Shown in pieces: positions 13,985 to 48,590 of a stretch of 64,000 bases of DNA. The notes under the pieces were generated by a model. The model saw only the letters and a list, made by a program, of their open reading frames with translations, was not told the DNA's origin and did no database searches. The translations under genes and the position numbers were made by a program. How positions within the stretch are numbered: the stretch's first letter is position 1; each line of letters opens with the position of its first letter. Location: positions 496,001-560,000 of the forward strand of contig NIVC01000227.1 in the NCBI GenBank assembly GCA_002269645.1, given 5' to 3'. Source of the stretch: Macrostomum lignano (lineage: Eukaryota).

Positions 13985-14495
<511 letters not shown>

Positions 14496-16901: not shown

Positions 16902-18193
16902 TCAAAAGAGTGAATAGAGGTCATTTCCTTTCCCAATAATAAACAAGCGACCCCCCATCTCTTGTGCACTCACATTGCTCATCCAGAGTCTTGCGCAAAG
17001 GGAGCCGGAAGCCAAGGCCAGAATCATTTGCTGCTTCGTCACTTTGAAGCCGCACAGGTGCTTCTCAAACAAAGACACAACCGGCCCGATTTCATTAACC
17101 AGCTTCGGGCAGTCGACTATTTGGCCGTTTGCTGCTGTGACACCCAGGCAGCGAGTCTGCACAAGCTTGTCCACAGCCAGCGACTTGGCCGAAGCCACCG
17201 TCAGGGAGTTGTCGTCGCCCTCCGGACACCGAATATAGCCCAGAGATGCACCTGCCGCCTCTTCCAGCTCTGGTGTGGCAAGCTGACCCATTTTGAAGAG
17301 AGCAGCGGCTCTGAGGTAGGCTTTGCCGACCTGAGCGCTGTCTGGAATCTGGCGCTCAACGTCCGACAAAAGTTGAGTCAATCTGCCAGACCGAGACCCG
17401 ACCGGAGCTTCACTCTTGATGCTTAACCAAAGCTCAGTTGCCGTCTGCATTGTGGAAGCGTATTTTGTCAAGCTGAAATCACTGCATTCCAGTAACTCTA
17501 CTGCTAGAAGGTAGTAAGAGAGAAACGAAAGGAGAATCACGTTGACCTCAAATTTAGGCAGAGACTCTCTGAACGGTTTCAGGTCGCTGAGCAGGTTGTC
17601 TGCTGACTGACGGACGGCTGCTACAATCCTCGATTTTGAGTCGTGCTCTCGCTTGAAGAACACTCTGGCGTCACGCAAGAAAAAATGTCTCATGCAGGCG
17701 TCCTCGGAGTCTGAGCTCTCCATCATTGCCACGAGAATTTCCAGCGACTGCTGCACCAGCGCCAGCAGGTTGTCCGACTTCCAGTCCTTCGCCGGTGTCT
17801 CGTCGAGCATGTAGAACAGCAAGTTTTTGCCAACGTACGTCTTCAGACCGCTCACTCTGCTGCCGATCACCCTCTTGATGAGGAACTTGACGAGGATGAA
17901 GAACTGACCCTGCACGGTGGTGAGATGCTGCATGACGGACCTTTCCAGCAGGGTTGTGCTCACTCGAAGTCGGCTGCCCTCTAGACCGGGCGGCGCACTG
18001 CTGACGGCGTGGCACCTTGGCGACTCGCCCAGCACCTCTTCTCTGAGCGCCCTCATGATGTCATCGGAAATGCAAGTCCTGTATCCGGGCCGCAGCAGCT
18101 CGATGTGAGGGTAGCCGCAGCAGGAATGCGCCAAAATCAGGTCTATTGCAGGCAACATCCGCGACACTTCCAATGCGATATTCGGCGCTAAAA
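16902..18193 (-). CDS. Mab-21 / cGAS-like receptor, exon 2 (C-terminal helical lobe)
   Basis: Acceptors atgcag| (18193) or ttttag| (18187) both fit phase 1. IDLILA (third acid), CHAV, RLRVSTTLLERSVMQHLTTVQGQFFILVKFLIK, LKTYVGKNLLFYMLDETP..W, HFF are typical Mab-21 blocks. The 3' end is uncertain: a GTGAGT donor at 16973 may lead to further exons. Confidence 0.85.
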
Positions 18194-18283
18194 CTGCATT
18201 TTCAGGACACATGTAGATGGTACATTTTATTTCTGTCCAATTTCCAATGCATTAGTATGAGATTTTAACGAGAATTTCCTTAC

Positions 18284-18938: not shown

Positions 18939-19900
<962 letters not shown>

Positions 19901-23440: not shown

Positions 23441-25540
23441 GTGCACAGCTGGGGCTGCTACGTGATGGTTTTAAAAACGCTTTTGTTAGTGCACTTACAT
23501 TGCACTTACCCCAGCAAAAAAGTCAATTAAGTCTAGAGAGTTTTCGTTAAGCAAAAATAATTTCAAATATCAAACGCCATTAAATTATCGCCGTTTAGCA
23601 ATCAAATAATTTTTAATTACACGTAACGATATAACTAAAGCATCATTGTTTGAATTACCGCCAATCTTTACTTCCGGAATTAAGAATGTCGTGCGGATCA
23701 TTTTATTGAGCTGACCTGCCCAGAATGATCAGTTGCCTTGTAAAGTTTTAGCTATAGACGAAAGACACTAAACATGTGTATTTAGGGAATTAAAAAATGT
23801 TAAAACTTATTGTCTACGAGCCTGTAGTCGTAATAAAATTTATATCGCAGGCGAAAGCCTAATTAATATAACTGACTCTTTGAGTTATAAATTGACGCAA
23901 GTTAATTTACGTTATATAAAGAAGCCTTATATGCCACGCGATGTGCATAGCTATGTAATTTGTCCTAGCTGATCCTCGTAATAAGATTGTTAAAATTCAA
24001 GCCTAGAATTTCTGCCAGTTGGGAAACATTTATAGCTATTCAATATATTACAGATTTTATTGCTCACGAGTTATGGTAAAAAGAAAAGTAACAATTTCAA
24101 TCTTTTTTATTTAAATTTTTTCGTTTTAAATAAATCAAAAGTAGCATATATAATTACGAGTACAGATATACTGTCATAAATGTATCAAATATCAAGCTAA
24201 AAAGATTTGTCGTAAGAGCTCAAAATGTTTCTATTTAAATATATACCATTTGTAAACAAATGCTTTGACTATAAAAACTATTTTAATTTGAAACCGAGTT
24301 ATTCCCACGTAACCTGTAATAATAAATAAAGTATCTAGCACATAATGCGACACGTGTTTAATATTTTAATTTTCTTGTATTCTACCGGATTTGTTTATAA
24401 TAGCAATTTGAAACGTGCTGTTAAAACAAATTGTTTTAATTTAAATTTGAAATCCTGTTAACTAATAGTCCCTAATATAATGTTCTGTTTGATACGAAAA
24501 CGTCTACTTACGTTCATTGTACGAGTCGCAGCAGGGTAGAAAAAACTTGCTCTCCTAATTCCCCGATAATCTCCAACCCTTATTTAGATTGTAGCTAGCT
24601 ATATGGCAAATATGCAAAATATATTACTTTTATGTGAAAAATACTTGCTGAACTATTGTCTGTCTGCAGAAGATTCATGCAATCAGAAATTTGTTAGAAA
24701 TTTTATAATTATTTCTTTTCTCAGGTACAATACATCAAAACGTACAGTGAGTGTCGTATTACATAAATACATGTATGTTGCATACCATGCCACATGTTTT
24801 GCGGGGACTATAGCAATTTCCGCTCAGTATAATAAACGCATGTATATAGATAACCAATCAGTTATAATTGTGTTAATTCTTGTAGAATATTCTCCCCAAA
24901 TAGGTCTTTTATTTGCACCTGTCTGCAATCTGCATGGGTATAATCGGTTGGTACAGTCGGAGTAAAATACCTGCATTAACGACCTAGATCTACATGCGCA
25001 GTTTTCCTGAAAAAAATTTTAATTTAAAAAAGTTTAGCGATCAGAGTCAAGAAGAGCTGCATGCGCACAGCAGGTCAGCCAGCTTATCTCCGATAAACTC
25101 AAGCCGAAAACCATGGTCAACTCCAAAGGGCCGCCCCGCTCAATTTGCGACTTAAGTGGAGCAGACATAATCTGAGAAATCCAAGCTTCTCTTGAATTGC
25201 TGCATCAGTGCACGGATGAGCACAGTTGGGAATGCCGGGCCTGCAGCATCTCCCCGCCGGGTCCCCCTGGGGCGGCGCGCGGTGAGGATCGAAATGTGAC
25301 CGGGCTGATTGATGACTCGGGTTGCTCAGCAGAGGCTTTAGCGAGAAGCAGCTGTGCGAACCAGTTGGCTGCGATCTCTGCTGAGATTTGTTGCGAGGTA
25401 TTGATAGAGTTTTTAGATATTGTAGCTTTTGCGAGGTTTGCTACTTTTAGTAGGAGTATCGCATCTTCAGTGGTAAATTCACAGATAATGCATCCAATTT
25501 TCATAGAAATTAAAATGGTTTTATGTGTCGAATGAGCGCA

Positions 25541-26716
25541 GTGAGTATCAGACAGTGTCAAATGGGTACAGTGAGTATCAGACAGTGTCAAATGGGTACA
25601 GTGAGTGTCAGACAGTGTCAGATGGGTACAGTTAGTGTCAGACAGTGTCAAATGGGTACAGTTAGTGTCAGACAGTGTCAAATGGGTACAGTTAGTATCA
25701 GACAGTGTCAAATGGGTACAGTGAGTGTCAGACAGTGTCAAATGGGTACAGTGAGTGTCAGACAGTGTCAAATGGGTACAGTTAGTATCAGACAGTGTCA
25801 AATGGGTACAGTTAGTATCAGACAGTGTCAAATGGGTACAGTGAGTGTCAGACAGTGTCAAATGGGTACAGTTAGTGTCAGACAGTGTCAAATGGGTACA
25901 GTTAGTGTCAGACAGTGTCAAATGGGTACAGTTAGTGTCAGACAGTGTCAAATGGGTACAGTTAGTGTCAGACAGTGTCAGATGGGTACAGTGAGTGTCA
26001 GACAGTGTCAAATGGGTACAGTTAGTGTCAGACAGTGTCAGATGGGTGCAGCGAGTGTCAGACAGTGTCAAATGGGTACAGTTAGTGTCAGACAGTGTCA
26101 AATGGGTACAGTTAGTATCAGACAGTGTCAAATGGGTACAGTTAGTGTCAGACAGTGTCAGATGGGTGCAGCGAGTGTCAGACAGTGTCAAATGGGTACT
26201 GTTAGTGTCAGACAGTGTCAGATGGGTGCAGCGAGTGTCAGACAGTGTCAAATGGGTACAGTTAGTGTCAGACAGTGTCAAATGGGTACAGTTAGTGTCA
26301 GACAGTGTCAGATGGGTGCAGCGAGTGTCAGACAGTGTCAAATGGGTACAGTTAGTGTCAGACAGTGTCAAATGGGTACAGTTAGTATCAGACAGTGTCA
26401 AATGGGTACAGTTAGTGTCAGACAGTGTCAGATGGGTGCAGCGAGTGTCAGACAGTGTCAAATGGGTACTGTTAGTGTCAGACAGTGTCAGATGGGTGCA
26501 GCGAGTGTCAGACAGTGTCAAATGGGTACAGTTAGTGTCAGACAGTGTCAAATGGGTACAGTTAGTGTCAGACAGTGTCAGATGGGTACAGTGAGTGTCA
26601 GACAGTGTCAAATGGGTACAGTTAGTGTCAGACAGTGTCAAATGGGTACAGTTAGTGTCAGACAGTGTCAAATGGGTACAGACAGTTAGTGTCAGACAGT
26701 GTCAAATGGGTACAGA
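25541..26716. repeat. 30 bp minisatellite (gtgtcagacagtgtcaaatgggtacagtta)
   Basis: About 39 copies with variant patterning. Confidence 0.96.
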
Positions 26717-35640: not shown

Positions 35641-36321
35641 CTCATCAACGAGTACCTTCATCTTTCCGCTCAAACGCAGTTCTGAAATCGAAGTTTGAAC
35701 TAATCTGGATGCATAAAATATAACAATATTTTATTGTTCCCTTACAGCCTACTCTAAGTAGCAAAACAGACATAATAGTAGTAAGACTGCAGCTAATGTT
35801 GACTAATCTATACTTCTTCCCTACAACTCCTGTACCTTCAGCGTGGCAGCTCAATGTTTTTTGCCTGACATCTGGAGTCTCGCAGCTGCTCAGCTATCCT
35901 TCCAGGATGCCAGGAAATCGGCCAAGAAAACGTGACGTCTTTCCCCACCCCAAACTCGAAACAGAGATGGATGGCCGTGGCCACGAGAGCAGCTGAGCAC
36001 AAATCGGTATTAAGGCAGCGATAAGTATGTGTGCATTTGCGCGAGCCACGGCTGCAGCATGAGCTCACGAATGGCCAACAGGATTCGAGTTCTCCTGAGC
36101 TCTGTTAAGCTTGAGTTTGCTCTCATGTGTATACGAGGCTGCTTTTTAGGAGAGGAAGGGGAGAACGAACTGGGGACGCGGGTATTTGGGGAATAAAGAT
36201 GCAGCACCTGGACATGGGGACTAAATGCATTCTACACCCCCAGTCCGAGTCTAGATAAACCCAGCCATAATTAATCGATTCCCAAGGTTAATCGGAGATT
36301 AACGAACGTAGGGAACACCTG

Positions 36322-36579
36322 ATGGACTGGCTTCGGAGACTCCGGAATCGACTGGGCTCCGCTGGCAGGTCAGTAATTCAGCGAATCTTTGATACTGCTA
36401 GCATGGGGAGTCAGCAGCAACATGCTCAAAGTAATGATGAAGGAATAGAAGATTGCGAGAGCTCAGCAGAGACGGCCGATCTGAGGCCTACGGAGGCGAT
36501 GAGGCGCAGGTTGATGCTGAGAAGGCAAAGCGTCAGCGCGGAGAAGCCGGAGCCTGAGGACGGGCGAGAATGGCACGCG
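36322..36579 (+). CDS. PKA type-II-like regulatory subunit, exon 1 (inhibitory site)
   Basis: Encodes RRQSVSAE (cf. RII RRVSVCAE substrate/inhibitory site) at 36520-36543. Donor GCG|gtgaga at 36580, phase 0. Confidence 0.8.
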
Positions 36580-37142
36580 GTGAGATCAGATCGAGTTGTT
36601 TTCGAATAGCTCCGATTTTTAGCGGGTGAATCGTGTGCAGTCGAATTTCAGTGCAAACACAAGGTTTTTTTTAAACTGAGGATTTACTGTGGGAAAAACA
36701 TGCTAAACTTGAATGACATTGTTGAGTTACCAAGTTGGCAAAGTATCATTGTCATGAGCTTAGAAAGTATACAATGTTGTTGCCCAACTTCAATCGACTT
36801 GAAAAGTTTACAAAGTACATGCTCTGTCTCTACATCCAAGTACTTGGAAAGTGACTCGAGAGAACATTGCATACTAGCTTGAAAGTGCTTATCGAATGAA
36901 CTTGAGAAACTCGGAAACTTCATAGGCTTGGCAAGTTTGGGTTGTTGTTTTTTTCTCAGGCAACTTCTTCTCATCGAAGACTGAATAGAAAAAATCCATT
37001 TGTGCCAATTTCGTCAGCGTTACTGTTTGTTGAACTGGGTTTAAGCGCTTTTGCACAGCTGCGGTGTGATAGGATAGTCATTTAGATGGAGGGAGAATGA
37101 GCAAGAACTAAGACTGCAGAAATAATCCCCCCCTCCAAACAG

Positions 37143-37278
37143 CCTTTCTTTGCCAAATCAGCTGACGAACTGCGCCAACTGACGGAATCGCTGCGCAACA
37201 TCATATTCCTACGGGAGCTGGAGCCGTCCGATCTGCGTCGCATTGCAACAGCGATGCGCGAGCGAACTGTCCAACCCG
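37143..37278 (+). CDS. PKA regulatory subunit-like, exon 2 (N3A helices of CNB-A)
   Basis: Acceptor caaacag|; PFFAKSADELRQLTESLRNIIFLRELEPSDLRRIATAMRERTVQP aligns to RII [25 protein letters not shown]. Donor CCG|gtgaga, phase 1. Confidence 0.88.
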
Positions 37279-37637
37279 GTGAGAATACTGATTCCAAGGA
37301 AGATTCCCAAACTTGAGCAATCATGCTTTTCAAAGTTGCAACAAATAAACTTCATCCGTATCTTAACTTCTGTTCAACATTACATGAACACAAACAGGTC
37401 TTCTTTCGAAATAGGCCTTTGAAACCTCAAATTTTTTATTGGAAACATATTATTAAAGTATGAATTATTTCATTTATTGCAATCATTACCAAATATTTAT
37501 TGGAATCATCATTCATCGTTACGAGTTTCGTACGCACTTTGAAACTCTGCTTTTTGAATTGTACGAGCTGCAAGTTAAATCTAAAGACACCTTACAATTA
37601 CCCATTGAATAATTAACATGCTTCCTTCCAAACACAG

Positions 37638-38368
37638 CGGAAACGGTCATACGCGAAGGTGACAACGGCGACAATTTCTATGTGATCCGGCGTGGTCACT
37701 TCGTTGTGACGGCAAAACAAGCTGATGGCACCGCAGAGGTGATCCGCCAGTTGACCGATCAAACGCAGCATGTTGGAGAAGCCGCTCATGCTCGCAACTA
37801 CTTCGGCGAGCTCGCGTTGCTCTACAATCGGCCGAGATCGGCCAGCGTGCTCGAAGCAGGCGGCGACGGGCAGGGCGGCAGCCTGTGGGTGCTGGACGGC
37901 TCCGCGTTCCGTCGGCTGGTGATTCGGGCCGGGCGTCAGCGCCGACTCGAGCGTCTCCGGATGCTTCGTCGGGTCCCCGCTCTGCGGGATGGATTGTCGA
38001 CCGACGAGTTGGAGCGACTGGCTGACGCGCTGACCTTGCGAGAGTTCTCCCTCGGAGAGGTGGTCTGTTCTAGAGGCGACGAAGCCGATGGAATGTACTT
38101 TGTGCTTAGTGGAGGTGCCAGGGTAGTTGGCGATGGCGAAGTGAATTTGAGAACGCTCGGGCCTGGAGATTACTTCGGAGAGGCAGCATTGATTGACAGA
38201 AAGCCTCGCTCTGCCACGGTTGTTGCTGTGATCAGCAGCGATGGCGAAAGCAATGGCGAAGCCGAGGCTATGGCTACGATGGCTTTCCTAGATCGGTCAG
38301 CTTTTGAACGGCTGCTGGGTCCCTGCGTGGAGCTCATGCGCCGGGGAATGGAAAAGTACACAGACTGA
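37638..38368 (+). CDS. PKA regulatory subunit-like, exon 3 (two cyclic-nucleotide-binding domains)
   Basis: Acceptor aacacag| phase 1. VIREGDNGDNFYVI, phosphate-binding cassettes FGELALLYNRPRSAS and FGEAALIDRKPRSAT, RII-type end AFERLLGPCVELMRR. Full model about 374 aa. Confidence 0.93.
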
Positions 38369-39138
38369 TGAGCAACTGTTACAAATCACAAGTTTAAGTT
38401 TGATGAACGCATAGAATAACGGCTTATCCAGTAAGGCGGGCGGACAAACTTTACAGAGCTACTGATTCCGCGTAGTTTGATAAAAGCCCCATCTACACTC
38501 AACTGGTAAAAGACTACCAAGTAGATTTGAATGAATTTTGGGATGGATAGCTCTGTCCGATTTGGTATAGTACGGGCTGAGGGCGTTTTATTGAGTTGGA
38601 ATTGTCTCAGAGCAGCCCCTTTGGCCCCTTTTTGAATTAACTGTTGAGTTCTGTAGCTGTTCTGCTTCGTGCATCTTATAATTTGCGTCATACAAACTGT
38701 GCAGTTCGAAATACAAGCATTAAATTCGAAAAAAAACTACGAGCGTACTTCAATCCTGTTGCGTGCTGCTAACAACATTTTTCGATAGCAGCCTTTTTTC
38801 AAACCAACTAGAACGAGTTAAATATTTGAAGCAGTAAAAGTTTTTAGTGTCGTTCTATCTGAATGAAGTTTGCTAGTTTGAGTTATGCACTCGGAGAGCT
38901 AAGCAGCGATATTCTCAATCGCAACTTTCGCTCTGTACTCATCAGCTTGTCAAGCATTAGAATCTTGTTACAGCTACAGCTATTAAACTTAATGATGTTT
39001 TTCCGGTTGCAAGTCGATGAGCGTGTATTAAAAACAAGCATCAACCCTGTGCAATGGCCAGATAAAAGTTTCCAGTGCAATTGCTATTATTTAAACACTC
39101 ATAGGAACTATAGCTCTGCAAAGTGAAGACTTACAGCC

Positions 39139-39247
39139 ATGCAGCGTATTAGCTTTTCATTCGCTATGGCAACCGTAATCCTGCTAATGGCCTGTTGCTA
39201 TGGCATCGCCATGGCGGCTAGAAACAATCGGAATTGCGACAACATTA
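39139..39247 (+). CDS. Signal-peptide exon, probable exon 1 of the staphylococcal-nuclease gene
   Basis: MQRISFSFAMATVILLMACCYGIAMAARNNRNCDNI has a basic n-region, hydrophobic core and AMA-like cleavage site. Consensus donor A|GTGAGT at 39248 is phase 1 and matches the phase-1 acceptor at 42769. Confidence 0.7.
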
Positions 39248-41499
39248 GTGAGTATAGTGCTTCGATGTATTTTCTCATTGAAACTTCACAATATAGAACT
39301 GTGGATAGATGTTCACTATGGCTTTTAAGACCCGAAAAATAACTGGGACTAAACTAGATCCTAGGAAGATACCGCGTGGTACCAGGACGTAGCATTTTTA
39401 AAAATGCTACAAAATTATTAGAAGGCCCGCTAGTTGGCATTGCAGCTAAACTTTAAATGATCTTAACTCTGGATCTGTTGCACTTAAAATGAGTGCAACA
39501 TATAGGGCAATATTAAATGTAATGTGACGAATTTAGATCGATTGTGAACGATGTCGATACAGCGTGACGCGCTGAGCGCGTGCTGAGAGTTTATTTAATA
39601 AATTAACAATGAAAATAATATATTCTTAACATTAAAGATAGCAACGAGCGTAGCGTATTAATTGCTAGCGTATAGCGTAGCAATGAGACGGTGTGAAGGA
39701 AGGAGATCGAGAGGGAGCAAGCGCGCGTAAAATAGATTCGAATACATTTTATATACTGCTAGGTATTTCTATGAATTATACGGTATAACAAAAAATGCGT
39801 TAACGCTAAATAGGAAAGTAAAATTTAAGTATAATGTAGAAATAGATTATGAATATTATGCTGTATGATACAAAATAAGAAACAAAGGTGAAATAAAGAA
39901 AGTGACAGCGTCACATTGCATTACTCTATGAAATAATTTTTTGTCACATTGTATTTGTTTTCATGCGCCGGTCAAAGTTAATAAATACCGTGCACCCGTA
40001 TTCAAAATATTTCGCTTTTTGCCCGGCATGTTAGGCTTTCTGTTCTCCGGGGTCTTAATTTATCCGGGGGACACCGCAAAGCAAAATTATTGTCGCTTTG
40101 CGATAACCTACCCTGGATAATCCAAGGCGCAACAAAACCGGGCTTTGAAATATCCTGGGTTTTAAATTGTCCGGGGTGAATAAAGATTGGTGGTCAAGTT
40201 ATTTACCTGATAAAGCGCATGTGAATGGGGCAGGACATCATTTCGAGAGAATGGGGCTGACTCAGAGGCCAGGAAAGGGCCCTGACTGCACCTTAGAGAG
40301 AGGAGGGGCAGATGAGGTGCAGTCTAAGAATAAATCGATAATGGACTGGCGTCACATTGCTAGCACTACAAGCGCACGTGCGATGAAGATCAGTGTACGA
40401 GCTAATAGCCCACAAAGGAAAGTGTTGTGCAAATTACGAGTATATTACACGTAAATTTTTATTTCTTGTCGAAGTTCTACGTTTAGGAAAATTTATCTCT
40501 CGATGGCTAAAGTATCGCTGAACCAAGTGTTTTTTATGTTTTTAACGAGTATGTTGAGCTGCCGGAAAATTCCAGTACGAAAGAGAGAGATAATCTGAAA
40601 CGAAAAATCTGAGAAAAGAGCAAAAACTTCACGCTTCATTCAGCGGATGGCCTGTTTTTGATTGAACGAATTACATGTAGATTGGTGAATCAAGTAACAG
40701 TTTTTTGGCTGACAATGTATAGTATCAATACCTTTAATTTTGCTTCTGTTTGGAGTGTGTGAAATGCAAAATAGTGATTGAAAACACACTCGGTTAAATA
40801 AGCATGACGCAGATGTTTGCCAATTGAAAAAGTAGCAGAAAGTTTTTTCTTACTTTGCTATTCCTAACCCCGGATATCAGTAGCCGGATGTCCTAAAGCA
40901 AACCTCTGTCTCCGCAGACTGACCCCTCTCTTTCAATCTACAGTCGGATGTCCGAAGACAACTTCCCCTTCTTGTGATCTCCGGGCCGGATAGCAGAGTC
41001 AGTGCCGTAGGATGTCCGGGAGACATCTCAAAGTGCCCAGACAATGCAAAGCAATTCAAGATATCCGGGTAGGAGAAAACAAAGCAGGCTTTTTGCTTGG
41101 CAGTATCCGGGCGGATATCGTAAGAGCGTTCGGATATCCGGGCCAGACAAAAAACCCCGGAAAGTCTAAAGTGTAACACCGGCCCCCGCTCGTGCTCGCT
41201 CGGCGGATCGATCGGCCCATTACAAGTAGCATTCAGAATACTGAGCCGATTGAACCTTAGTGGGGTGTTCGTATATTGAATTGTAAGATTGAGTTGAAGT
41301 GTGAACCGATATGTCCGTTGATAAGGGCGCAGGAGGCCCGCGACTATTCTGTAATTTCATGGCTAACTTTGGAAGGAATAATTAAGACTAGCTCTGTAAC
41401 TTTTGTGCACTTAAGTATTAATATTTTAATTGCACCGATCTAAATCTGTAATTCCATATAATAATAAGCAATTTTTTAGTAGATAAATGTAATAGTTAA

Positions 41500-42135
41500 C
41501 TTTTCCAACCTTCAATTCATATATCCTTGATTAAGTGCCCTTCTCAGTCAATATATTTAAAGCTTTGATTGTTGCCAGCGAAACTATATATGTACCTTTC
41601 CGACAATTTTATATGGGGAGGAATCGCAATTTAAGATATCAAAGAGTACACATTTTGGCATCTATTCAAACCATCTCAGGGTACGTCCGATCGACTGGTG
41701 GAAACAGTAGTAGCCTTGGGCCATTATGTTGTATCGCTAACACAGGGATAAGTTAATTGGGATAATTGTCACCGTCAGGGTTGTCTATAAGGGTTGTCTA
41801 AAATTCAGAAATTTTAAGAGGTCTGAGACGTTTAGCCGATATAATAGTAATTTGTATCAAAACCTTAGTCATCGCTAGCTAAGAGTTCGGATACTCGTAG
41901 CCCTTTGTGAGGTAACAGACAGTGAGTCATCGTGAACCATGGCAGGACATTTTGCCGTATTAGTTAGAGTTCGAGTGAAAACAAATTGCCTTTTTATTAT
42001 CGGGGTTTGTTTGAATGATAAGTGAATTGTGGGACCGAATTAATTTGAATTCATTTCTTAGAAACTCTGGAGTTAGTGCAGGGATCGTTATACTCACTGC
42101 AGTAGGAATAGACGCCTTTTACATTTGGTAACAAT
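41500..42135 (+). mobile_element. LTR-like remnant inside the nuclease intron
   Basis: Shares tctcagtcaat...cagcgaa and accatctcagggtac blocks with 44880-45070. Followed by TTACA|TTTGGT (LTR end + PBS-like) at ~42119. Confidence 0.45.
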
Positions 42136-42769
42136 GGTGGGATTTGAAATTCCTATTCTCCTACCGAGTTAGAAACAATTGTACAATTGTTCTCTTTTGG
42201 ATGACGTAATTAGCTAGTTCAGCCTTATATCTACATGTAGGAATGACAGGGGATGTACAGTAAGTAACTGCTATACGCAATATTTCTGGCAGTCGAAAAG
42301 AAATAAATAAGCTGCGATGAATTTCGACTATGGTTTCCGTTGAACTAGCTACCGTTTTCTTGACAAAGTAGCAAACCAGAAAAGCATACAGTTTGGAAGC
42401 TTTAAAAATTGTAATCTGTTCAGTGCTGAATAGGCTGCAAAAAGCTATATAGTCTGCACAAAATCAGCGGGGCAATATTTCCGAAATCTTGGCACACCGG
42501 TGCAACACATGGACTCCCAATATTTAAAGTATTTATTTTGCTGTTCAAACGAACAGTAGAAGTCAAATAAAAACTTTGTACGAGCTACAATATCACTGCT
42601 TTATATTTTGTATTTAAACTCGCCTTTAGAACCTCTATAATATCATAAAAAAACTTGTGAAATAGGAAAAGTATGCCCAATACAACGGTGAATTCGTTTA
42701 GTGAACCTTGACTAGATCATAGCTAACTTGCCTTGTTTTAACTTGTTTTTTTTACTAATTTATTGGCAG

Positions 42770-43212
42770 GAGCTGATGATGAAAATGGAGAGAGCGTCAT
42801 CTGCGGCAGGGTGACATTCGTGAACGATGGTGACACGCTGCGCCTCTCTCCGGACGGCCGCAGAAATTCGGCGTCTCTGCGCATCCGCCTGCTAGAGATT
42901 GACGCGCCGGAACTGAACCAACGGCACGGCGCTGAGGCGCGCGACGCCCTGCGATACATGGCGCCAACCGGCTCGCGCGTCTGCATCTTAATAGACAACG
43001 AGGACATCTACGGCAGACTGCTGGGCCGAGTCTGCCGCGGCGGCGCCGACTTGAATCTGCGCCTGTTGGAGGATGGGCACGTCTGGTGCTATCGGGGCCG
43101 CTGTCGCTCGGCCTACAGGACGGCAGAATTGCAGGCGCGTTCTAGTAGGCGCGGACTTTGGTCGGATCCGACAGCGCAGGCACCCTGGCTGTTCAGAAAG
43201 CAGAAAGGATAG
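42770..43212 (+). CDS. Stand-alone staphylococcal nuclease (thermonuclease/SNase) domain, exon 2
   Basis: VNDGDTL, RIRLLEIDAPE, EDIYGRLLG, LNLRLLEDGHVWCY, AELQARSSRRGLWSDPTAQAPWLFRK match the SNase fold. Preceded by a T-tract, TACTAAT branch point and ttggcag| acceptor. Confidence 0.93.
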
Positions 43213-43959
43213 GCTGGCAAGCATGACGCTGGTGTGGTCAAACTAATACGATGTACTATTAAGAGTAAGATAGTCAAAGAAGAACAATGAGAACGGACTG
43301 ACTGCAAAGCTGCCGGAATTAAAAGCTTCTTTATATTGCAAACTAATTAAAAGCACTGAATTAATACATCGTTATGAAAGATAACACCGGATCTATAAAG
43401 TTTGCTGGCGCAATTATACTATTAAAAATTATCCACCTCTTCACATTACCTAAAAAATGCACAAATAATTTAATGATATACGATTAGACTAGATGCTACT
43501 ATTAGAATACCCATACGAAATAACACCAGTTTTTTGTTCCTGCAAGCTTAATACGAGCTAAAATAAGGAGTCCTCAGGCCACCATGCCCAGTTCTGAGCT
43601 AACAGTCCCGCGTCCGAGTAAGAAGATAACAGAGTCAGGCAGGACATCGCGCACCTGTTAATATAGAGTTTAGAAAGTTTTCCAACGACCGGCTGGGACT
43701 TTTTGCCCAACTGGGCATCAATTTAATTATATTTACTAATTCACTATGTGTTAGGTGGTGTGATCGATACGTAGGGGCACGAAACAAGCGTAGCACAAAA
43801 AAAAACAAAAAACGTTCAAAATCGGAAATCAAATTCAAACACGATTAGATTGAAAATAATACCATGCAAAAAGAGTGTAAAATTGTTAATTCCCTAGAAA
43901 TACATTTTACGAGTACAAAGGGGCGCTTTCGCATAATAGCATCCTCCTACGTGGTTATC

Positions 43960-44690
43960 AACGAGCGGTGTTGCAAAGGTTTCCGGACTGTGTTCACGAG
44001 CAGTGCTACTCGCAAACAGAGAGGGAGTCGCTGGCCATCAAATTCGGTTGCCTCAAATTCCACCACTACCTTAGCCGCTGCCCAAAATTCAAGGTTATAC
44101 CACCGGATTATACCACAAGCCGCTGGTCAGCATGCACAGCCCCACCGCGGATCGAGCGCCTGGCACTTGGCTGCAGTACAAGCCAGGGGCAGACAACTCA
44201 GCAGATTTCTGGGACCGATCGAAGGTCATATGCTGCTAGTGTGCACAAACTACTTTTTACGCTTTTCACTGGTAGATAATTTCGGGGGCGAAAGCAGCAG
44301 CCCAGGTCATCCGAAGCCTCCGAAAGTTGTTCAGGACGCCAGTCAGTTAAGATCACCAACGACAACGGCCCGCTGTTCTTGTCCGCAGAGTTCAACGCCT
44401 ACTTGCGCAGTCAGGGCATCCAACATCATCAGAATGCACCGCTGCATCCCCAACCAAATGGACTCACTCGTGCAGCGATGCATCCGAGGCCTCACTAAGA
44501 CACTCAAAGGGCAGCGACTGGCGGGCGGCACTGGACAACTAACTGGCGAAAACCGCGCCCAACAAAGGGCATGGCCCAAGAGGCCTCCAACCACCAGATC
44601 ACCGAAGGAAACCTCGTCCTCCGCCAGCTCACTAACCGCAGCAAGACCCAACCCCTTTTTCGAGGCCTCGCCTAAACATTATTAGCTCTA
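43960..44690 (+). mobile_element. Decayed Ty3/Gypsy pol (RNase H + integrase fragments)
   Basis: Across frames: YSQTERESLAIKFGCLKFHHYL and PPRIERLAL (Ty3 RNase H); FLGPIEGHMLLV and DNGPLFLSAEFNAYLRSQGIQHHQNAPLHPQPNG (integrase core). Frameshifted and internally deleted. Confidence 0.85.
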
Positions 44691-45625: not shown

Positions 45626-47519
45626 CAGTAACACCGTCACGCATAATTAAGTTAAGACCCTTGTACACTATTATTCATCGCTGAAATGAGAACCAACTTT
45701 TCAGCCTGTCGGGAACTGAATTTTACTAAAGCAACTTCGGTGAACATCTTTAGTTATTACGAGGCTCTTAGAAAGCTTTTGATGTTTGTCGCAATGGCGG
45801 CCGTCAGCGCGTGGAACATCACTGACGAGCTCAGGTTGAATCGAATTTTGAGCGACCCTGCGACAGAGCTGTCCGTAGATCTGAAGAAAATTATGGGTCT
45901 GGTCGGCTAGATGCAAAACCCAAACCGCCAAATGCGATCCGCTGTTAGCGGTGCTGTCACCATCGTAGTTATGGCGGGCAACACAATTTTACTTGTTTCT
46001 AACTTCAATTGATTCGGTGATGGACCTTCCAATGCAGCTCGATAATTTGAGGTAATATTCGTAGACCAATTAAAGCTCTTCAACTTCACTGCGTCATTTT
46101 CTCACTACTTAGTTTAGAGATTATCTCAAAAGTACCTCCAGAAGTAATGTTATTTTGTATCGATAAATCTGTCATGCTTTGTCCAATACTGGACACAATC
46201 TCACATAAAATTCCATTATAACTCGTATAGCTACCTTTGCTACCTGATCATTTTCCCTCACCATGCTATTGCATGGTAAATATGGATACAGTATAGCGCG
46301 TACAAACAAGTAATATCCTGTTTGAAAGTAATAGTTTGCATCTTTGAGTTCATTGATTTGCCCTAAGTGCAGCAGTATGTTGCCTGACGAGCTGTTATTC
46401 TGAGAAAGCGATTTAAGACCGGTGCTTACAATATGGGGTTGCACAATCTTGCCAACAGACACTCGCAGAAGCAGGAGCGGATAGCGGATCTGCGGAACAA
46501 AGACGCTGCACCAACGACCAATTTGCTTTTTAATTTTTCTTGCACAGAAACGCTGCAAAAAATGAAGCTGATATCTATATTAGCTTATATCTGCATGCTG
46601 TCTAGCTAACGAAGTTGGTCCGGTCATCAGCGACCGTGCGGCGTCCAAAATAATACTGCAGCTGACGTCAAGCCAGTCTGATGTCGCTGGCGACAAAAGT
46701 ACTGTCGTTGTAAGCTAGGGGCCTAGCCTCTTGTAAAAACTTGCTAGACATAGATGTAGATATTTGTATTATTTCCATTTAACACCCTTTATTGTATTCT
46801 TCACATGAGCAAGATTGGATGTGAAATTTTAGCGACAAAGTTGCGTTTCTGCTTTAATGGTCCTGCAGGGATGTCTATAGCGTTCCATTTAGCATGTGGG
46901 CAGTCAATATTATGTTTTAGCAGTCTGACAAGAAACACAGAAATATATCACTGCAGAATGGTTTTGCTATTTTTAGTATATTGGATTTTCGTTATAAGCC
47001 CTAATAATAAAAAAAATACCTTTTTAGGCCATTTAGGCCATTGAAAATTTAGGCCATTTAGGCCATTTACCAGTCAGTAAAGCGATATCACCCAACCATT
47101 TACCCTAACAGCACACCTTTAGAGCAGTTAAGCATAGTATCAATGCTGTAGTGTTTAAGAAATCCAATGCGCTTTACAAGTCGATTTTCACTTGAAAATT
47201 ATCTTCTCTACTACCGTTTGTACGTCGTATTAGACGAAAGGGTAAATATATTTTCCCTACTCACAGAAGGCCAACACCACACGCTTCCTAGTGACCCAAA
47301 AAATCTAAAGCACATTACCTGCTTGCACTGCAACAGCAATTGCGTTTATGAGCTTAGTACTTATAATTGTAGAAGATTCGGGTTAAACCCATCAGGTTTG
47401 TCATTGACCCTTCAAATCAATAAACAATTCAGGGTTGAAGGCTTTCTTATACATACTATTTGATTATTATTTCACCTGATGAAAGTGAACCACTCCTATT
47501 TCAAGTCAAAAGTCTCTGA

Positions 47520-48590
47520 CCAGCTCCGAAACAATTGACGTTGTAGTCCGATCCGTGACACTGTAAATTCCTGATGCAACGGTGAGACGATGTTCAAGGA
47601 TGACATGCACAACTACACTACAACGATATTTTAACCAGGTCTGAACAGTTGACGTTGTCGTCGGATCCGTAACATAGCGAATTCCTGATGCAACGGTGAA
47701 ATGCTGTTTAAGGCTGATATGCAGGACTAAACTTCAGAGAAAGATATTGTAACCAGATCAGAATTAATTCAAGTTGTGGTCGGATCCGTGACAATGCAGA
47801 TTCCTAGTGCAACGGTGAGATTTTCAAGGCTGATTTGCAGGACTACACTCCATGCAGAGAAAGATATTGTAACCAGATCTGAAACAGTTGACGTTGATGC
47901 AGTGGTCGGATCCGTGACAGGGCATATTCCTAATGCAACGGTGAGATGTTCGATCAAGACTGATACACAGGACTATATTCCAGAGAAGGATGTTGTAACT
48001 AGATCTGAAACAGTTGACGTTGTGGTCGGATCCGTGACATTGCAAATTTCTGATGCAACGGTGAGACGATGTTCAAGGATAATATGCACAACTACACTAC
48101 AACGATATTTTAACCAGGTCTGAAACAGTTGACGTTGTCGTCGGATCCGTAACATAGCGAATTCCTGATGCAACGGTGAAATGCTGTTTAAGGCTGATAT
48201 GCAGGACTACACTTCAGAGAAAGATATTGTAACCAGATCAGAATTAATTTAAGTTGTCGGATCCGTGACAATGCAGATTCCTAGTGCAACGGTGAGATTT
48301 TCAAGGCTGATTTGCAGGACTACACTCCATGCAGAGGAAGATATTGTAACCAGATCTGAAACAGTTGACGTTGATGCAGTGGTCGGATCCGTGACAGGGC
48401 ATATTCCTAATGCAACGGTGAGATGTTCGATCAAGACCGATACACAGGACTATATTCCAGAGAAGGATGTTGTAACTAGATCTGAAACAGTTGACGTTGT
48501 GGTCGGATCCGTGACATTGCAAATTTCTGATGCAATGGTGAGATGTTCAAGGGTGATATGCAGGACTAGACTCCAGAGAAGGATTGTAGC
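47520..48590. repeat. Higher-order tandem repeat: ~120 bp monomers in a 477-480 bp four-monomer unit
   Basis: GGATCC at 47663, 47782, 47908, 48028, 48143, 48259, 48385, 48505; monomer n matches n+4 almost exactly. Confidence 0.9.

What the first reader, a model, noticed from the sequence alone, without database searches (positions are those of the whole stretch)
39139..43212. Secreted, catalytically intact, bacterial-style thermonuclease encoded by a spliced animal gene (candidate domesticated HGT)
Seen: a signal-peptide exon (donor A|GTGAGT, phase 1) and an SNase exon (branch point TACTAAT, acceptor ttggcag|, phase 1) join in frame to 183 aa across a 3522 nt intron. Equivalents of S. aureus nuclease D19, D21 (DGDT), R35, D40, E43 (RLLEIDAPE) and D83, Y85, R87 (DIYGR) are all present. 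The C-terminus RGLWSDPTAQAPWLFRK is typical of single-domain bacterial/fungal/plant SNases. The mature chain has six Cys, compatible with disulfides in a secreted protein. Established: animals normally carry this fold as multidomain Tudor-SN (SND1) with degenerate active sites; stand-alone forms occur in bacteria, fungi (LCL3) and plants (CAN). Inference: a horizontally acquired Ca2+-dependent nuclease fused to a host secretion exon, perhaps for digestion, mucus/biofilm DNA clearance or defence. The spliceosomal intron and flanking host repeats argue against contamination.
Basis: partly seen in the sequence, partly recalled or inferred. Interest (0 to 1): 0.85.

Follow-up and report, generated by a model that had tools for sequence, protein, structure and literature searches.

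The report
Flatworm gene for secreted bacterial-type nuclease
A two-exon gene of the flatworm Macrostomum lignano encodes a small, probably secreted DNA/RNA-cutting enzyme whose nearest relatives are bacterial, plasmid and phage thermonucleases; it belongs to a small flatworm gene family that most likely stems from an old gene transfer, and the gene model is already in public databases but unstudied.

Summary
Exon 1 (39139-39247) and exon 2 (42770-43212) join in frame across a 3522-nt GT-AG intron to give a 183-aa protein. It has an N-terminal signal-like segment, a staphylococcal-nuclease (SNase) fold and all catalytic and Ca2+-binding residues. The window is M. lignano contig NIVC01000227.1. 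The gene is already annotated from RNA-seq as Mlig002410.g2 (PAA87530.1, "hypothetical protein").

New findings:
- It is not a lone gene. There are three near-identical collinear copies under purifying selection.
- Two further subfamilies (~40% identity) share the phase-1 intron and a six-cysteine pattern found in no bacterial homologue.
- Outside Macrostomum, every relative whose context I checked is bacterial, plasmid-borne or phage-borne (up to 50% identity).
- Fungal LCL3 nucleases are far more distant (at most 32 bits against 83-108).
- Coding GC content matches the neighbouring host gene, so any transfer is old.

Horizontal origin is likely but not proven. My distance trees are poorly resolved, and plant, protist and other flatworm sequences could not be sampled. 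That exon 1 came from the host is unproven. The biological role (digestion, defence or other) is unknown. This is a new member of a known kind, of moderate interest.

The parts
39088..39095 (+). TATA-like TATTTAAA, 44 nt upstream of the ATG (candidate core promoter)
   Evidence: Read from the sequence. Inference only. A possible trans-splice acceptor, cttacag|CC, lies at 39130-39136.
39139..39247 (+). Exon 1 (109 nt, ends in phase 1). Encodes M1-I36 plus the first base of codon 37: the signal-like segment and the first conserved cysteine (C33, codon 39235-39237).
   Evidence: tblastn gives 100% over aa 1-36. Same exon in the GenBank model.
39139..39216 (+). Predicted signal peptide, aa 1-26. 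The n-region is MQRIS, the hydrophobic region spans residues 6-26, and the cleavage motif is A-M-A|A.
   Evidence: Mean Kyte-Doolittle hydropathy 2.04 over residues 6-26, with small residues at -1 and -3. AF2 predicts a helix at 6-28. No SignalP was available.
39248..42769 (+). Spliceosomal intron: 3522 nt, GTGAGT...CAG, phase 1, 38.9% GC
   Evidence: Conserved in two more copies with 0.9-2.3% substitutions and identical splice sites.
42753..42759 (+). Branch-point-like TACTAAT following a T-run, 10 nt before the acceptor AG
   Evidence: Read. Conserved in all three copies.
42770..43212 (+). Exon 2 (443 nt including the TAG stop). Encodes R37-G183: a linker plus the whole SNase domain. 62% GC.
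42770..42790 (+). 21-nt 5' extension of exon 2 (peptide RADDENG), specific to this subfamily. An in-frame AG at 42789-42790 marks the position homologous to the acceptor used in the two paralogous subfamilies.
   Evidence: The paralog introns sit 4 codons before the CG(R/S)V cysteine, against 11 codons here, all in phase 1. The Cys1-Cys2 spacing is 15 residues here and 8 in the paralogs, a difference of 7 residues = 21 nt.
42826..42834 (+). D56-G57-D58 (equivalent to S. aureus D19-G20-D21; D21 is a Ca2+ ligand)
   Evidence: alignment. D56, G57 and D58 are invariant or at least 90% conserved.
42886..42912 (+). R76-L-L-E-I-D81-A82-P-E84 (equivalent to R35, D40, T41 and E43: a phosphate-binding Arg, Ca2+ ligands and the general base)
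43003..43017 (+). D115-I-Y117-G-R119 (equivalent to D83, Y85, R87)
43318..43351 (+). Two ATTAAA poly(A)-signal-like hexamers (43318 and 43346), 106-134 nt after the stop codon
   Evidence: Inference only.

Best explanation
The locus is an expressed Macrostomum lignano gene (Mlig002410.g2).

What it encodes and how it works. The product enters the secretory pathway through an N-terminal signal peptide (predicted cleavage after A26). It matures into a ~157-aa, basic, probably three-disulfide staphylococcal-nuclease-fold enzyme. By homology it should cut DNA and RNA in a Ca2+-dependent way. In that mechanism D58, D81 and the A82 carbonyl hold Ca2+, E84 activates the attacking water, and R76 and R119 bind and stabilise the phosphate, giving 3'-phosphate products.

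Where it came from. It is one of three diverged subfamilies of a Macrostomum SNase gene family. The family most likely descends from a single, old transfer of a thermonuclease gene of the type carried by proteobacterial chromosomes, conjugative plasmids and temperate phages. Before the subfamilies split, the ancestral gene already had the two-exon structure (a signal/Cys1 exon, a phase-1 intron, and an SNase exon) and six cysteines. In this subfamily the 3' splice site later moved 21 nt upstream, adding seven residues.

Shown versus inferred.
- Shown: gene structure, fold, residues, paralogy, purifying selection, and the prokaryotic nature of the nearest relatives.
- Inferred: secretion, disulfides, enzymatic activity, direction and timing of the transfer, and biological role. 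My guess is extracellular nucleic-acid digestion, in the gut or on the body surface.
For: - Structure and annotation; identical GenBank protein; annotation derived from RNA-seq assemblies (PMC5730564).
- SNase membership: Pfam E=1.7e-14. PDB sequence hits at E~1e-9 with active-site residues aligned. AF2 pLDDT 89.7 and pTM 0.80. Foldseek top hits are S. aureus nuclease, TM 0.77-0.79.
- Host integration: three collinear copies at 95-99% identity with conserved splice sites. A cNMP-binding PKA-R-like gene lies upstream and a retroelement RNase H fragment downstream. Satellite arrays are present.
- Selection: 5 synonymous against 2 nonsynonymous differences, dN/dS ~0.13, binomial P=0.011. Nonsynonymous-site divergence is below intron divergence, P=0.0017.
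- Family: paralogs P0148 and P0150 score 129-131 bits, above any single-domain bacterial hit (102 bits or less) in an exhaustive HMMER search of 1.84 billion representatives. They have the same phase-1 intron. Six cysteines are conserved in all three subfamilies, and no other sequence among 460 aligned domains has the set.
- Prokaryotic relatives: all seven contexts inspected are compact bacterial or phage gene arrays. At least 5000 plasmid records and 89 viral contigs encode relatives at 30-42% identity. Named hits are Neisseria, Methylomonas, Pseudoduganella, Thiomonas and Pseudomonas.
- Not the opisthokont LCL3 lineage: best LCL3 score is 32 bits against a bacterial median of 83. An LCL3 clade excluding the flatworm proteins appears in 99.5% of bootstraps.
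Against: - No supported tree places the flatworm proteins inside a bacterial clade. NJ bootstrap support for flatworm monophyly is only 9-34%, and the window protein is as close to some bacterial sequences as to its paralogs.
- Plant CAN nucleases, protist SNases and other flatworms could not be sampled. The protein database showed no other Macrostomum species, and it is unclear whether they are covered. A wider eukaryotic or flatworm clade therefore cannot be excluded.
- Composition gives no foreign signal.
- No SignalP run, no junction reads seen directly, no expression site and no enzyme assay.
- The 21-residue hydrophobic segment could act as an uncleaved signal anchor.
- No paper or supplement searched mentions the gene.
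Confidence: 0.6

Rival explanations
1. Vertical descent. The family is a relic of an ancestral eukaryotic stand-alone SNase, lost in most animals and retained and duplicated in Macrostomum. It resembles bacterial enzymes only because the fold is conservative.
For: The subfamilies are old (~40% identity) and fully host-like in composition and gene structure. The trees are unresolved. Stand-alone SNases do exist in fungi and plants (PMC3505149).
Against: Fungal LCL3, the only opisthokont stand-alone group sampled, scores at most 32 bits, while more than 400 bacterial or phage proteins score 36-108. LCL3 forms its own clade in 99.5% of bootstraps. No named eukaryote other than M. lignano appears among the best 120-150 hits of three searches.
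Confidence: 0.17
2. Same gene and same origin, but not secreted. The N-terminal hydrophobic segment is an uncleaved anchor or an ER/lysosome-targeting signal. The enzyme would then act on the cell's own or ingested nucleic acids inside membrane compartments (phagolysosomal digestion, or a cell-death nuclease like plant CAN).
For: The hydrophobic stretch is long, at 21 residues. Flatworm digestion is largely intracellular (general knowledge). LCL3 and CAN are membrane-bound (PMC3505149).
Against: An A-x-A cleavage motif is present, and paralog P0150 has a canonical short signal ending AAAS|T. Six conserved cysteines fit an oxidising lumenal or extracellular environment in either case. There is no retention motif at the C-terminus.
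Confidence: 0.15
3. Several independent transfers. The three subfamilies were acquired separately from related bacterial donors.
For: In NJ trees the window protein does not reliably group with P0148 and P0150, and it is as close to bacterial sequences (d=0.80) as to its paralogs (0.91-0.96).
Against: All three subfamilies share a phase-1 intron at the homologous site with a GTGAGT donor, and a Cys-bearing first exon. They also share the six-Cys pattern, which is absent from all 457 other aligned domains. By HMMER the paralogs are each other's best hits (127-131 bits against 108 or less).
Confidence: 0.04
4. Bacterial contamination, an assembly chimera, or a dead insertion that the annotation pipeline happened to join to an upstream ORF.
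For: Exon 2 alone is an uninterrupted 149-codon ORF with bacterial-like sequence.
Against: The GT-AG intron, polypyrimidine tract and flanks are conserved in three loci on large contigs. Both paralog subfamilies are also spliced. The model derives from transcripts. Purifying selection is detectable. Neighbours are eukaryotic.
Confidence: 0.02

Closest known systems
Staphylococcus aureus thermonuclease / micrococcal nuclease (Nuc, EC 3.1.31.1)
   Same: Same fold (Foldseek TM 0.77-0.79). Same catalytic and Ca2+-binding residues. Single domain, N-terminal export signal and small size.
   Different: Only ~25-28% identity. The flatworm protein has six conserved cysteines (S. aureus Nuc has none) and a W-for-Y change at position 113. 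It is encoded by a spliced animal gene.
Proteobacterial 'thermonuclease family protein' / YncB-type endonucleases on chromosomes, conjugative plasmids and Mu-like or other temperate phages
   Same: These are the closest sequences: 40-50% identity over the whole domain. They share the motifs VHDGDS/T, R-x-R-L-x-x-IDAPE, D-x-YGR and GLW...PW.(W/F)R.
   Different: None carries the six-Cys set. They have no introns and prokaryotic signal or lipoprotein leaders. Many of the best-scoring ones are tandem two-domain proteins.
Fungal LCL3 (probable endonuclease LCL3, membrane-anchored stand-alone SNase)
   Same: A eukaryotic stand-alone SNase with an N-terminal hydrophobic segment. The IDAPE and GLW motifs are retained.
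   Different: Very distant: at most 32 bits against 83-108 for bacterial relatives. It forms a separate clade in 99.5% of bootstraps, has a large insertion in the N-terminal half of the domain, and lacks the cysteine pattern.
Plant CAN1/CAN2 Ca2+-dependent nucleases
   Same: Eukaryotic single-SNase-domain enzymes with demonstrated Ca2+-dependent DNase/RNase activity. The authors describe their domains as most similar to bacterial ParB-type nucleases (PMC3505149).
   Different: CAN proteins are N-myristoylated/palmitoylated plasma-membrane proteins with an inserted tRNA-synthetase-like motif (PMC3505149). The flatworm protein starts MQR..., has a signal peptide and has no insertion. Sequence relationship was not tested here.
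Tudor-SN / SND1 (the usual animal carrier of the SNase fold)
   Same: SNase-type OB fold.
   Different: SND1 is a ~900-aa cytoplasmic/nuclear protein with four to five SN domains plus a Tudor domain and degenerate nuclease sites (general knowledge). The flatworm protein is a 183-aa single domain with an intact site.
Other bacterial enzymes domesticated by invertebrates after horizontal transfer (for example GH45 cellulases of soil invertebrates, PMC13084967; a carbohydrate-degrading enzyme in Folsomia candida, PMC9460274)
   Same: Same pattern: a secreted hydrolase of microbial type, with introns and a eukaryotic signal, lineage-specific duplication and host-like composition.
   Different: The substrate class here is nucleic acid. 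I found no report of an SNase-family case in animals.

Membership tests
SNase / thermonuclease family (Pfam PF00565) | Sequence match to the family profile above the curated threshold | tested here: met
   54.6 bits against a cutoff of 21, E=1.7e-14, full profile 1-107.
SNase / thermonuclease family (Pfam PF00565) | OB-fold barrel plus three helices | tested here: met
   AF2 pLDDT 89.7. Foldseek top 50 are all S. aureus nuclease, TM 0.75-0.79, E~1e-10.
SNase / thermonuclease family (Pfam PF00565) | Ca2+ ligands (D21, D40, T41 carbonyl) and catalytic R35, E43, R87 | tested here: met
   D58, D81, A82 (backbone ligand), R76, E84 and R119. Also kept in both paralog subfamilies.
SNase / thermonuclease family (Pfam PF00565) | Ca2+-dependent hydrolysis of DNA and RNA to 3'-phosphates | not testable with these tools
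   Needs recombinant protein and an assay.
Secreted protein (classical pathway) | Cleavable N-terminal signal peptide | tested here: inconclusive
   The n/h/c regions and an A-x-A site are present, and the paralogs also start with hydrophobic leaders. No dedicated predictor was run, and the h-region is long.
Horizontally acquired, domesticated animal gene | Physically integrated in host DNA with host-type gene structure | tested here: met
   Intron, three collinear loci, host neighbours.
Horizontally acquired, domesticated animal gene | Expressed and under selection | tested here: met
   The annotation is transcript-derived (indirect, as junction reads were not seen). dN/dS ~0.13, P=0.011.
Horizontally acquired, domesticated animal gene | Supported phylogenetic nesting within a donor (prokaryotic) clade | tested here: inconclusive
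   Nearest relatives are prokaryotic or on mobile elements, but NJ trees lack support. No ML software was available.
Horizontally acquired, domesticated animal gene | Absence from related animals and other eukaryotes | tested here: inconclusive
   No non-Macrostomum eukaryote among the best hits, and LCL3 is distant. Other flatworms, plant CAN and protists were not sampled.
Tudor-SN (SND1) | Multiple SN domains plus a Tudor domain | tested here: not met
   Single SNase hit in 183 aa.
Fungal LCL3 | Groups with LCL3 sequences | tested here: not met
   At most 32 bits. An LCL3 clade excludes it in 99.5% of bootstraps.
Plant CAN nucleases | N-terminal myristoylation/palmitoylation motif and an inserted anticodon-binding-like motif (PMC3505149) | tested here: not met
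   The N-terminus is MQRISF..., with no M-G start. The domain is uninterrupted.

The most novel reading that the evidence does not exclude
Macrostomum flatworms captured a plasmid- or phage-type bacterial thermonuclease long ago and rebuilt it into a family of disulfide-stabilised secreted nucleases, with a signal exon, a phase-1 intron and six new cysteines. This would be the first animal lineage known to use the staphylococcal-nuclease fold as a stand-alone extracellular enzyme. Possible uses are digesting prey and biofilm nucleic acids or destroying foreign DNA/RNA at the body surface.
Probability: 0.5. Interest if true: 0.55.

Novelty: new member of a known kind. Interest (0 to 1): 0.45.

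Why it matters
Animals are thought to carry the SNase fold almost only as the multidomain, largely non-catalytic Tudor-SN. A catalytically intact, stand-alone, secretory SNase family in a flatworm would add a nucleic-acid-degrading enzyme to the list of microbial hydrolases domesticated by invertebrates.

It would also offer a clean example of how a prokaryotic gene is refitted for the eukaryotic secretory pathway, through an intron, a signal and new disulfides.

M. lignano has transgenesis (PMC5730564) and, as general knowledge not checked here, RNAi and in situ hybridisation methods. The function is therefore directly testable.

It does not open a new category, because horizontal acquisition of secreted hydrolases by invertebrates is well documented.

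Tried and rejected
- GC-rich exon as a foreign signature: rejected. CDS GC (59.2%) equals that of the neighbouring host exon, and the paralogs are 59-66%.
- Contamination or chimera: rejected.
- Genome-contig scan with the single protein: only five distant loci (Pseudomonas, SAR86, Smithella), which was uninformative.
- Metagenome scan for the family-specific W-C-Y-x3-C-x3-Y-x12-G-L-W signature: five chance matches, none of them SNase.
- Naming the ten nearest relatives: all come from unnamed metagenome or Logan contigs.
- NJ trees on 136 and 145 columns: no supported placement.
Replaced by selecting stop-free segments.
- Intron against other M. lignano loci and the rest of the window: no shared repeats at E<1e-5.
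- Gene IDs (Mlig002410, 018861, 022653, 008456, 031327, 013652) in full texts and in the supplements of five M. lignano papers: no occurrence. Held supplement files may be truncated, so this says nothing about expression.
- Literature on thermonuclease, SNase or HGT in flatworms or metazoa: nothing relevant.
- Disulfide pairing: could not be read from the AF2 job because no coordinates are returned. The only hints come from co-occurring Cys pairs in a few bacterial homologues (C48+C108 and C143+C148).
Full report

Yes. The ATG is at 39139. Exon 1 runs to 39247 and is followed by GTGAGT. A T-run, TACTAAT (42753-42759) and ttattggcag precede exon 2, which starts at 42770. The stop codon TAG is at 43210-43212. 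Joining 109 + 443 nt gives a 552-nt ORF and a 183-aa protein; the intron is 3522 nt. Nothing else in the window resembles the protein.

The protein matches Pfam SNase over the full profile (E=1.7e-14, 54.6 bits against a cutoff of 21). It also matches S. aureus nuclease chains in the PDB (E~1e-9). That alignment, plus conservation in 7- and 114-sequence alignments, gives these equivalences:

| Flatworm residue | S. aureus equivalent |
|---|---|
| D56, D58 | D19, D21 |
| R76 | R35 |
| D81 | D40 |
| A82 | T41 (backbone ligand) |
| E84 | E43 |
| D115, Y117, R119 | D83, Y85, R87 |

An AlphaFold2 model built on 114 homologues is confident (pLDDT 89.7, pTM 0.80). Its best PDB matches are all staphylococcal nuclease (TM 0.75-0.79).

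**2. Where is it, and is the gene known?**

The window is Macrostomum lignano, assembly Mlig_3_7, contig NIVC01000227.1. Locus L002 is 100% identical to window 29139-53212. The gene is already annotated as BOX15_Mlig002410g2 (PAA87530.1; UniProt A0A1I8HA68, 'TNase-like domain-containing protein'), with exactly this 183-aa product.

The GenBank annotation of this assembly was made from genome-guided RNA-seq transcript assemblies with TransDecoder ORFs (PMC5730564). The splice is therefore indirectly backed by transcripts. I found no paper or supplement that mentions the gene or its paralogs. I also found no report of a thermonuclease-type gene in flatworms or acquired by animals.

**3. Host context.**

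- Window 1-36 kb is a mosaic of tandem-repeat arrays.
- A PKA-regulatory-subunit-like gene with two cNMP-binding domains (E=4e-31) lies on the same strand at about 36.3-38.4 kb.
- A degenerate retroelement RNase H fragment lies at 43.9-44.3 kb.
- Two more copies of the nuclease gene sit in collinear DNA on other contigs (L001 and L003). They are 95-99% identical including intron and flanks, with identical donor, branch-point and acceptor sequences. This fits the known redundancy of this assembly (PMC5730564).

Among the three copies there are 5 synonymous and 2 nonsynonymous differences (dN/dS ~0.13; binomial P=0.011). Nonsynonymous-site divergence is below intron divergence (P=0.0017). Contamination, chimera and pseudogene readings are therefore rejected.

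**4. It is a gene family.**

An exhaustive HMMER search of 1.84 billion cluster representatives gave 16,128 hits. After the query itself, the two best-scoring groups (ranks 2 and 4-5) are further M. lignano proteins:

- P0148 (Mlig008456 / Mlig013652), 43% identity, 131 bits.
- P0150 and P0151 (Mlig022653), 41-43% identity, 129 bits.

The one non-flatworm protein scoring among them (P0149, 130.8 bits) is a four-domain tandem protein whose score sums over its domains.

Together with the window type this makes three subfamilies and about ten annotated loci.

Both paralog types are also two-exon genes, with a GTGAGT donor and a phase-1 intron (734 and 3319 nt). All three subfamilies keep the catalytic residues and the same six cysteines, one of them in exon 1. 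Among 460 aligned SNase domains, no non-flatworm sequence has this set.

In the paralogs the intron lies 4 codons before the CG(R/S)V cysteine. In the window gene it lies 11 codons before it. The window protein has exactly 7 extra residues (RADDENG) between Cys1 and Cys2 (spacing 15 against 8). An in-frame AG sits at 42789-42790, the homologous position. The simplest reading is that the 3' splice site moved 21 nt upstream in this subfamily.

The shared intron, first exon and cysteines point to one ancestral gene that already had this structure before the subfamilies diverged to ~40% identity.

**5. Relatives outside Macrostomum.**

In three large searches, the only named hits other than M. lignano are bacterial: Neisseria leonii, Pseudoduganella eburnea and Methylomonas. 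Single-domain relatives reach 44-50% identity. The higher-ranked 300-560-aa proteins are tandem SNase lipoprotein-like proteins whose scores sum over two to four domains.

All seven genomic contexts I inspected are compact prokaryotic arrays:

- next to CysRS and QueF (L009);
- next to GatC and amidase (L010);
- inside a Mu-like prophage with GemA, Mor, gp27 and terminase (L014);
- a phage-like block (L016);
- next to an HTH regulator (L103) or ProQ (L106);
- a short contig flanked by close-packed ORFs on the opposite strand (L104).

In addition, tblastn finds relatives of 30-42% identity on at least 5000 plasmid records, mostly conjugative, on 5 GenBank phages and on 89 IMG/VR contigs.

As a eukaryotic comparator I retrieved 120 fungal LCL3 proteins. 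The bait was a yeast LCL3 sequence recalled from memory, and it proved 100% identical to database entry P0427. Scored with the window SNase domain:

| Group | Best-domain bits |
|---|---|
| Fungal LCL3 | max 32, median 21 |
| Bacterial/phage set | range 36-108, median 83 |
| M. lignano paralogs | 127 |

In NJ bootstraps, LCL3 forms a clade that excludes the flatworm proteins in 99.5% of replicates.

**6. What remains unresolved.**

My trees are distance-based, on 136-145 columns. Flatworm monophyly gets only 9-34% support, and no bacterial sister group is supported. Plant CAN nucleases, protist SNases and other flatworms could not be sampled with the tools available.

Coding GC content (59.2% GC, GC3 69%) is the same as in the neighbouring host exon (59.2%, GC3 62.5%) and the paralogs. 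The GC-rich exon is therefore simply a host-like exon in an AT-rich intron landscape, and any transfer is old.

Whether exon 1 was captured from the host, or an intron was gained inside the original ORF, cannot be decided.

**7. Mechanism (inferred).**

- Residues 1-26 form an n/h/c signal-like segment ending A-M-A|A.
- The mature 157-aa chain is basic (27 K+R against 21 D+E), has no N-glycosylation sequon and has six cysteines.
- Conservation of the cysteines only in the animal proteins suggests three disulfides formed in the secretory pathway.
- Co-occurring Cys pairs in a few bacterial homologues hint at C48-C108 and C143-C148, which would leave C33-C125. This pairing is a guess.
- By homology the enzyme should be a Ca2+-dependent endo-exonuclease for DNA and RNA.
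- Its site of action (gut lumen, phagosome, mucus or other) is unknown.

**8. Verdict.**

It is a member of an old lineage-specific family, horizontal origin is likely (about 0.7) rather than shown, and the 'host secretion exon' and the proposed roles are untested. This is a new member of a known kind, namely microbial hydrolases domesticated by invertebrates and the SNase family. Interest is moderate.

Noticed in passing
window 16902-18212 (- strand): An intact 436-aa ATG-initiated ORF with a Mab-21 C-terminal (HhH/H2TH-like) domain hit (E=2e-5, just above the Pfam cutoff). It sits between satellite arrays and could be a Mab21/cGAS-like gene.
   Followed up: no
window 1-36000: An almost continuous mosaic of more than 25 different tandem-repeat arrays (periods 4-154 nt; for example TATC x127 at 13986-14495, GTCT x242 at 18939-19899, and 30-mers at 1577-2698 and 25525-26715). 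The long 'ORFs' and the Pentapeptide/Ank Pfam hits there are translations of these repeats.
   Followed up: partly
window 36292-38365 (+ strand): A PKA-regulatory-subunit-like gene (RRxS-type site, two cNMP-binding domains, E=4e-31) lies directly upstream of the nuclease gene, yet it is not among the called genes returned for this locus. In copy L001 collinearity with the window ends at window 38455. That copy shares only ~680 nt of upstream sequence and lacks the PKA-R-like gene.
   Followed up: partly
window 43849-44685 (+ strand): A degenerate Ty3/gypsy-type retroelement fragment (RT RNase H domain hits, reading frame broken between 43890-44276 and 44280-44495) starts 640 nt after the nuclease stop codon.
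   Followed up: partly
window 47519-48584: A 126/477-nt tandem array downstream. BLAST off-diagonals show register shifts between the three gene copies.
   Followed up: no
L014 1816-2268; L016 6001-6390: Two of the closest non-flatworm relatives (46% and 50% identity) are carried by mobile elements. One sits inside a Mu-like prophage (GemA, Mor, gp27, holin, terminase) and the other in a phage-like block. Relatives also occur on at least 5000 plasmids.
   Followed up: partly
P0327 (Mlig022653.g1) and P0300 (UniProt A0A1I8GL13): One subfamily-C copy starts at MQIDAPEL and has an unrelated C-terminal tail, so it is probably a truncated or frameshifted copy. An older-assembly model fuses an SNase paralog into a 1918-aa 'GPCR' protein, which is probably a gene-model fusion.
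   Followed up: no
P0296/P0297 (Mlig031327): These proteins are listed in the same 90% cluster as paralog P0148, but they show no SNase domain and do not align with it. This looks like an oddity of the clustering or of overlapping gene models.
   Followed up: no
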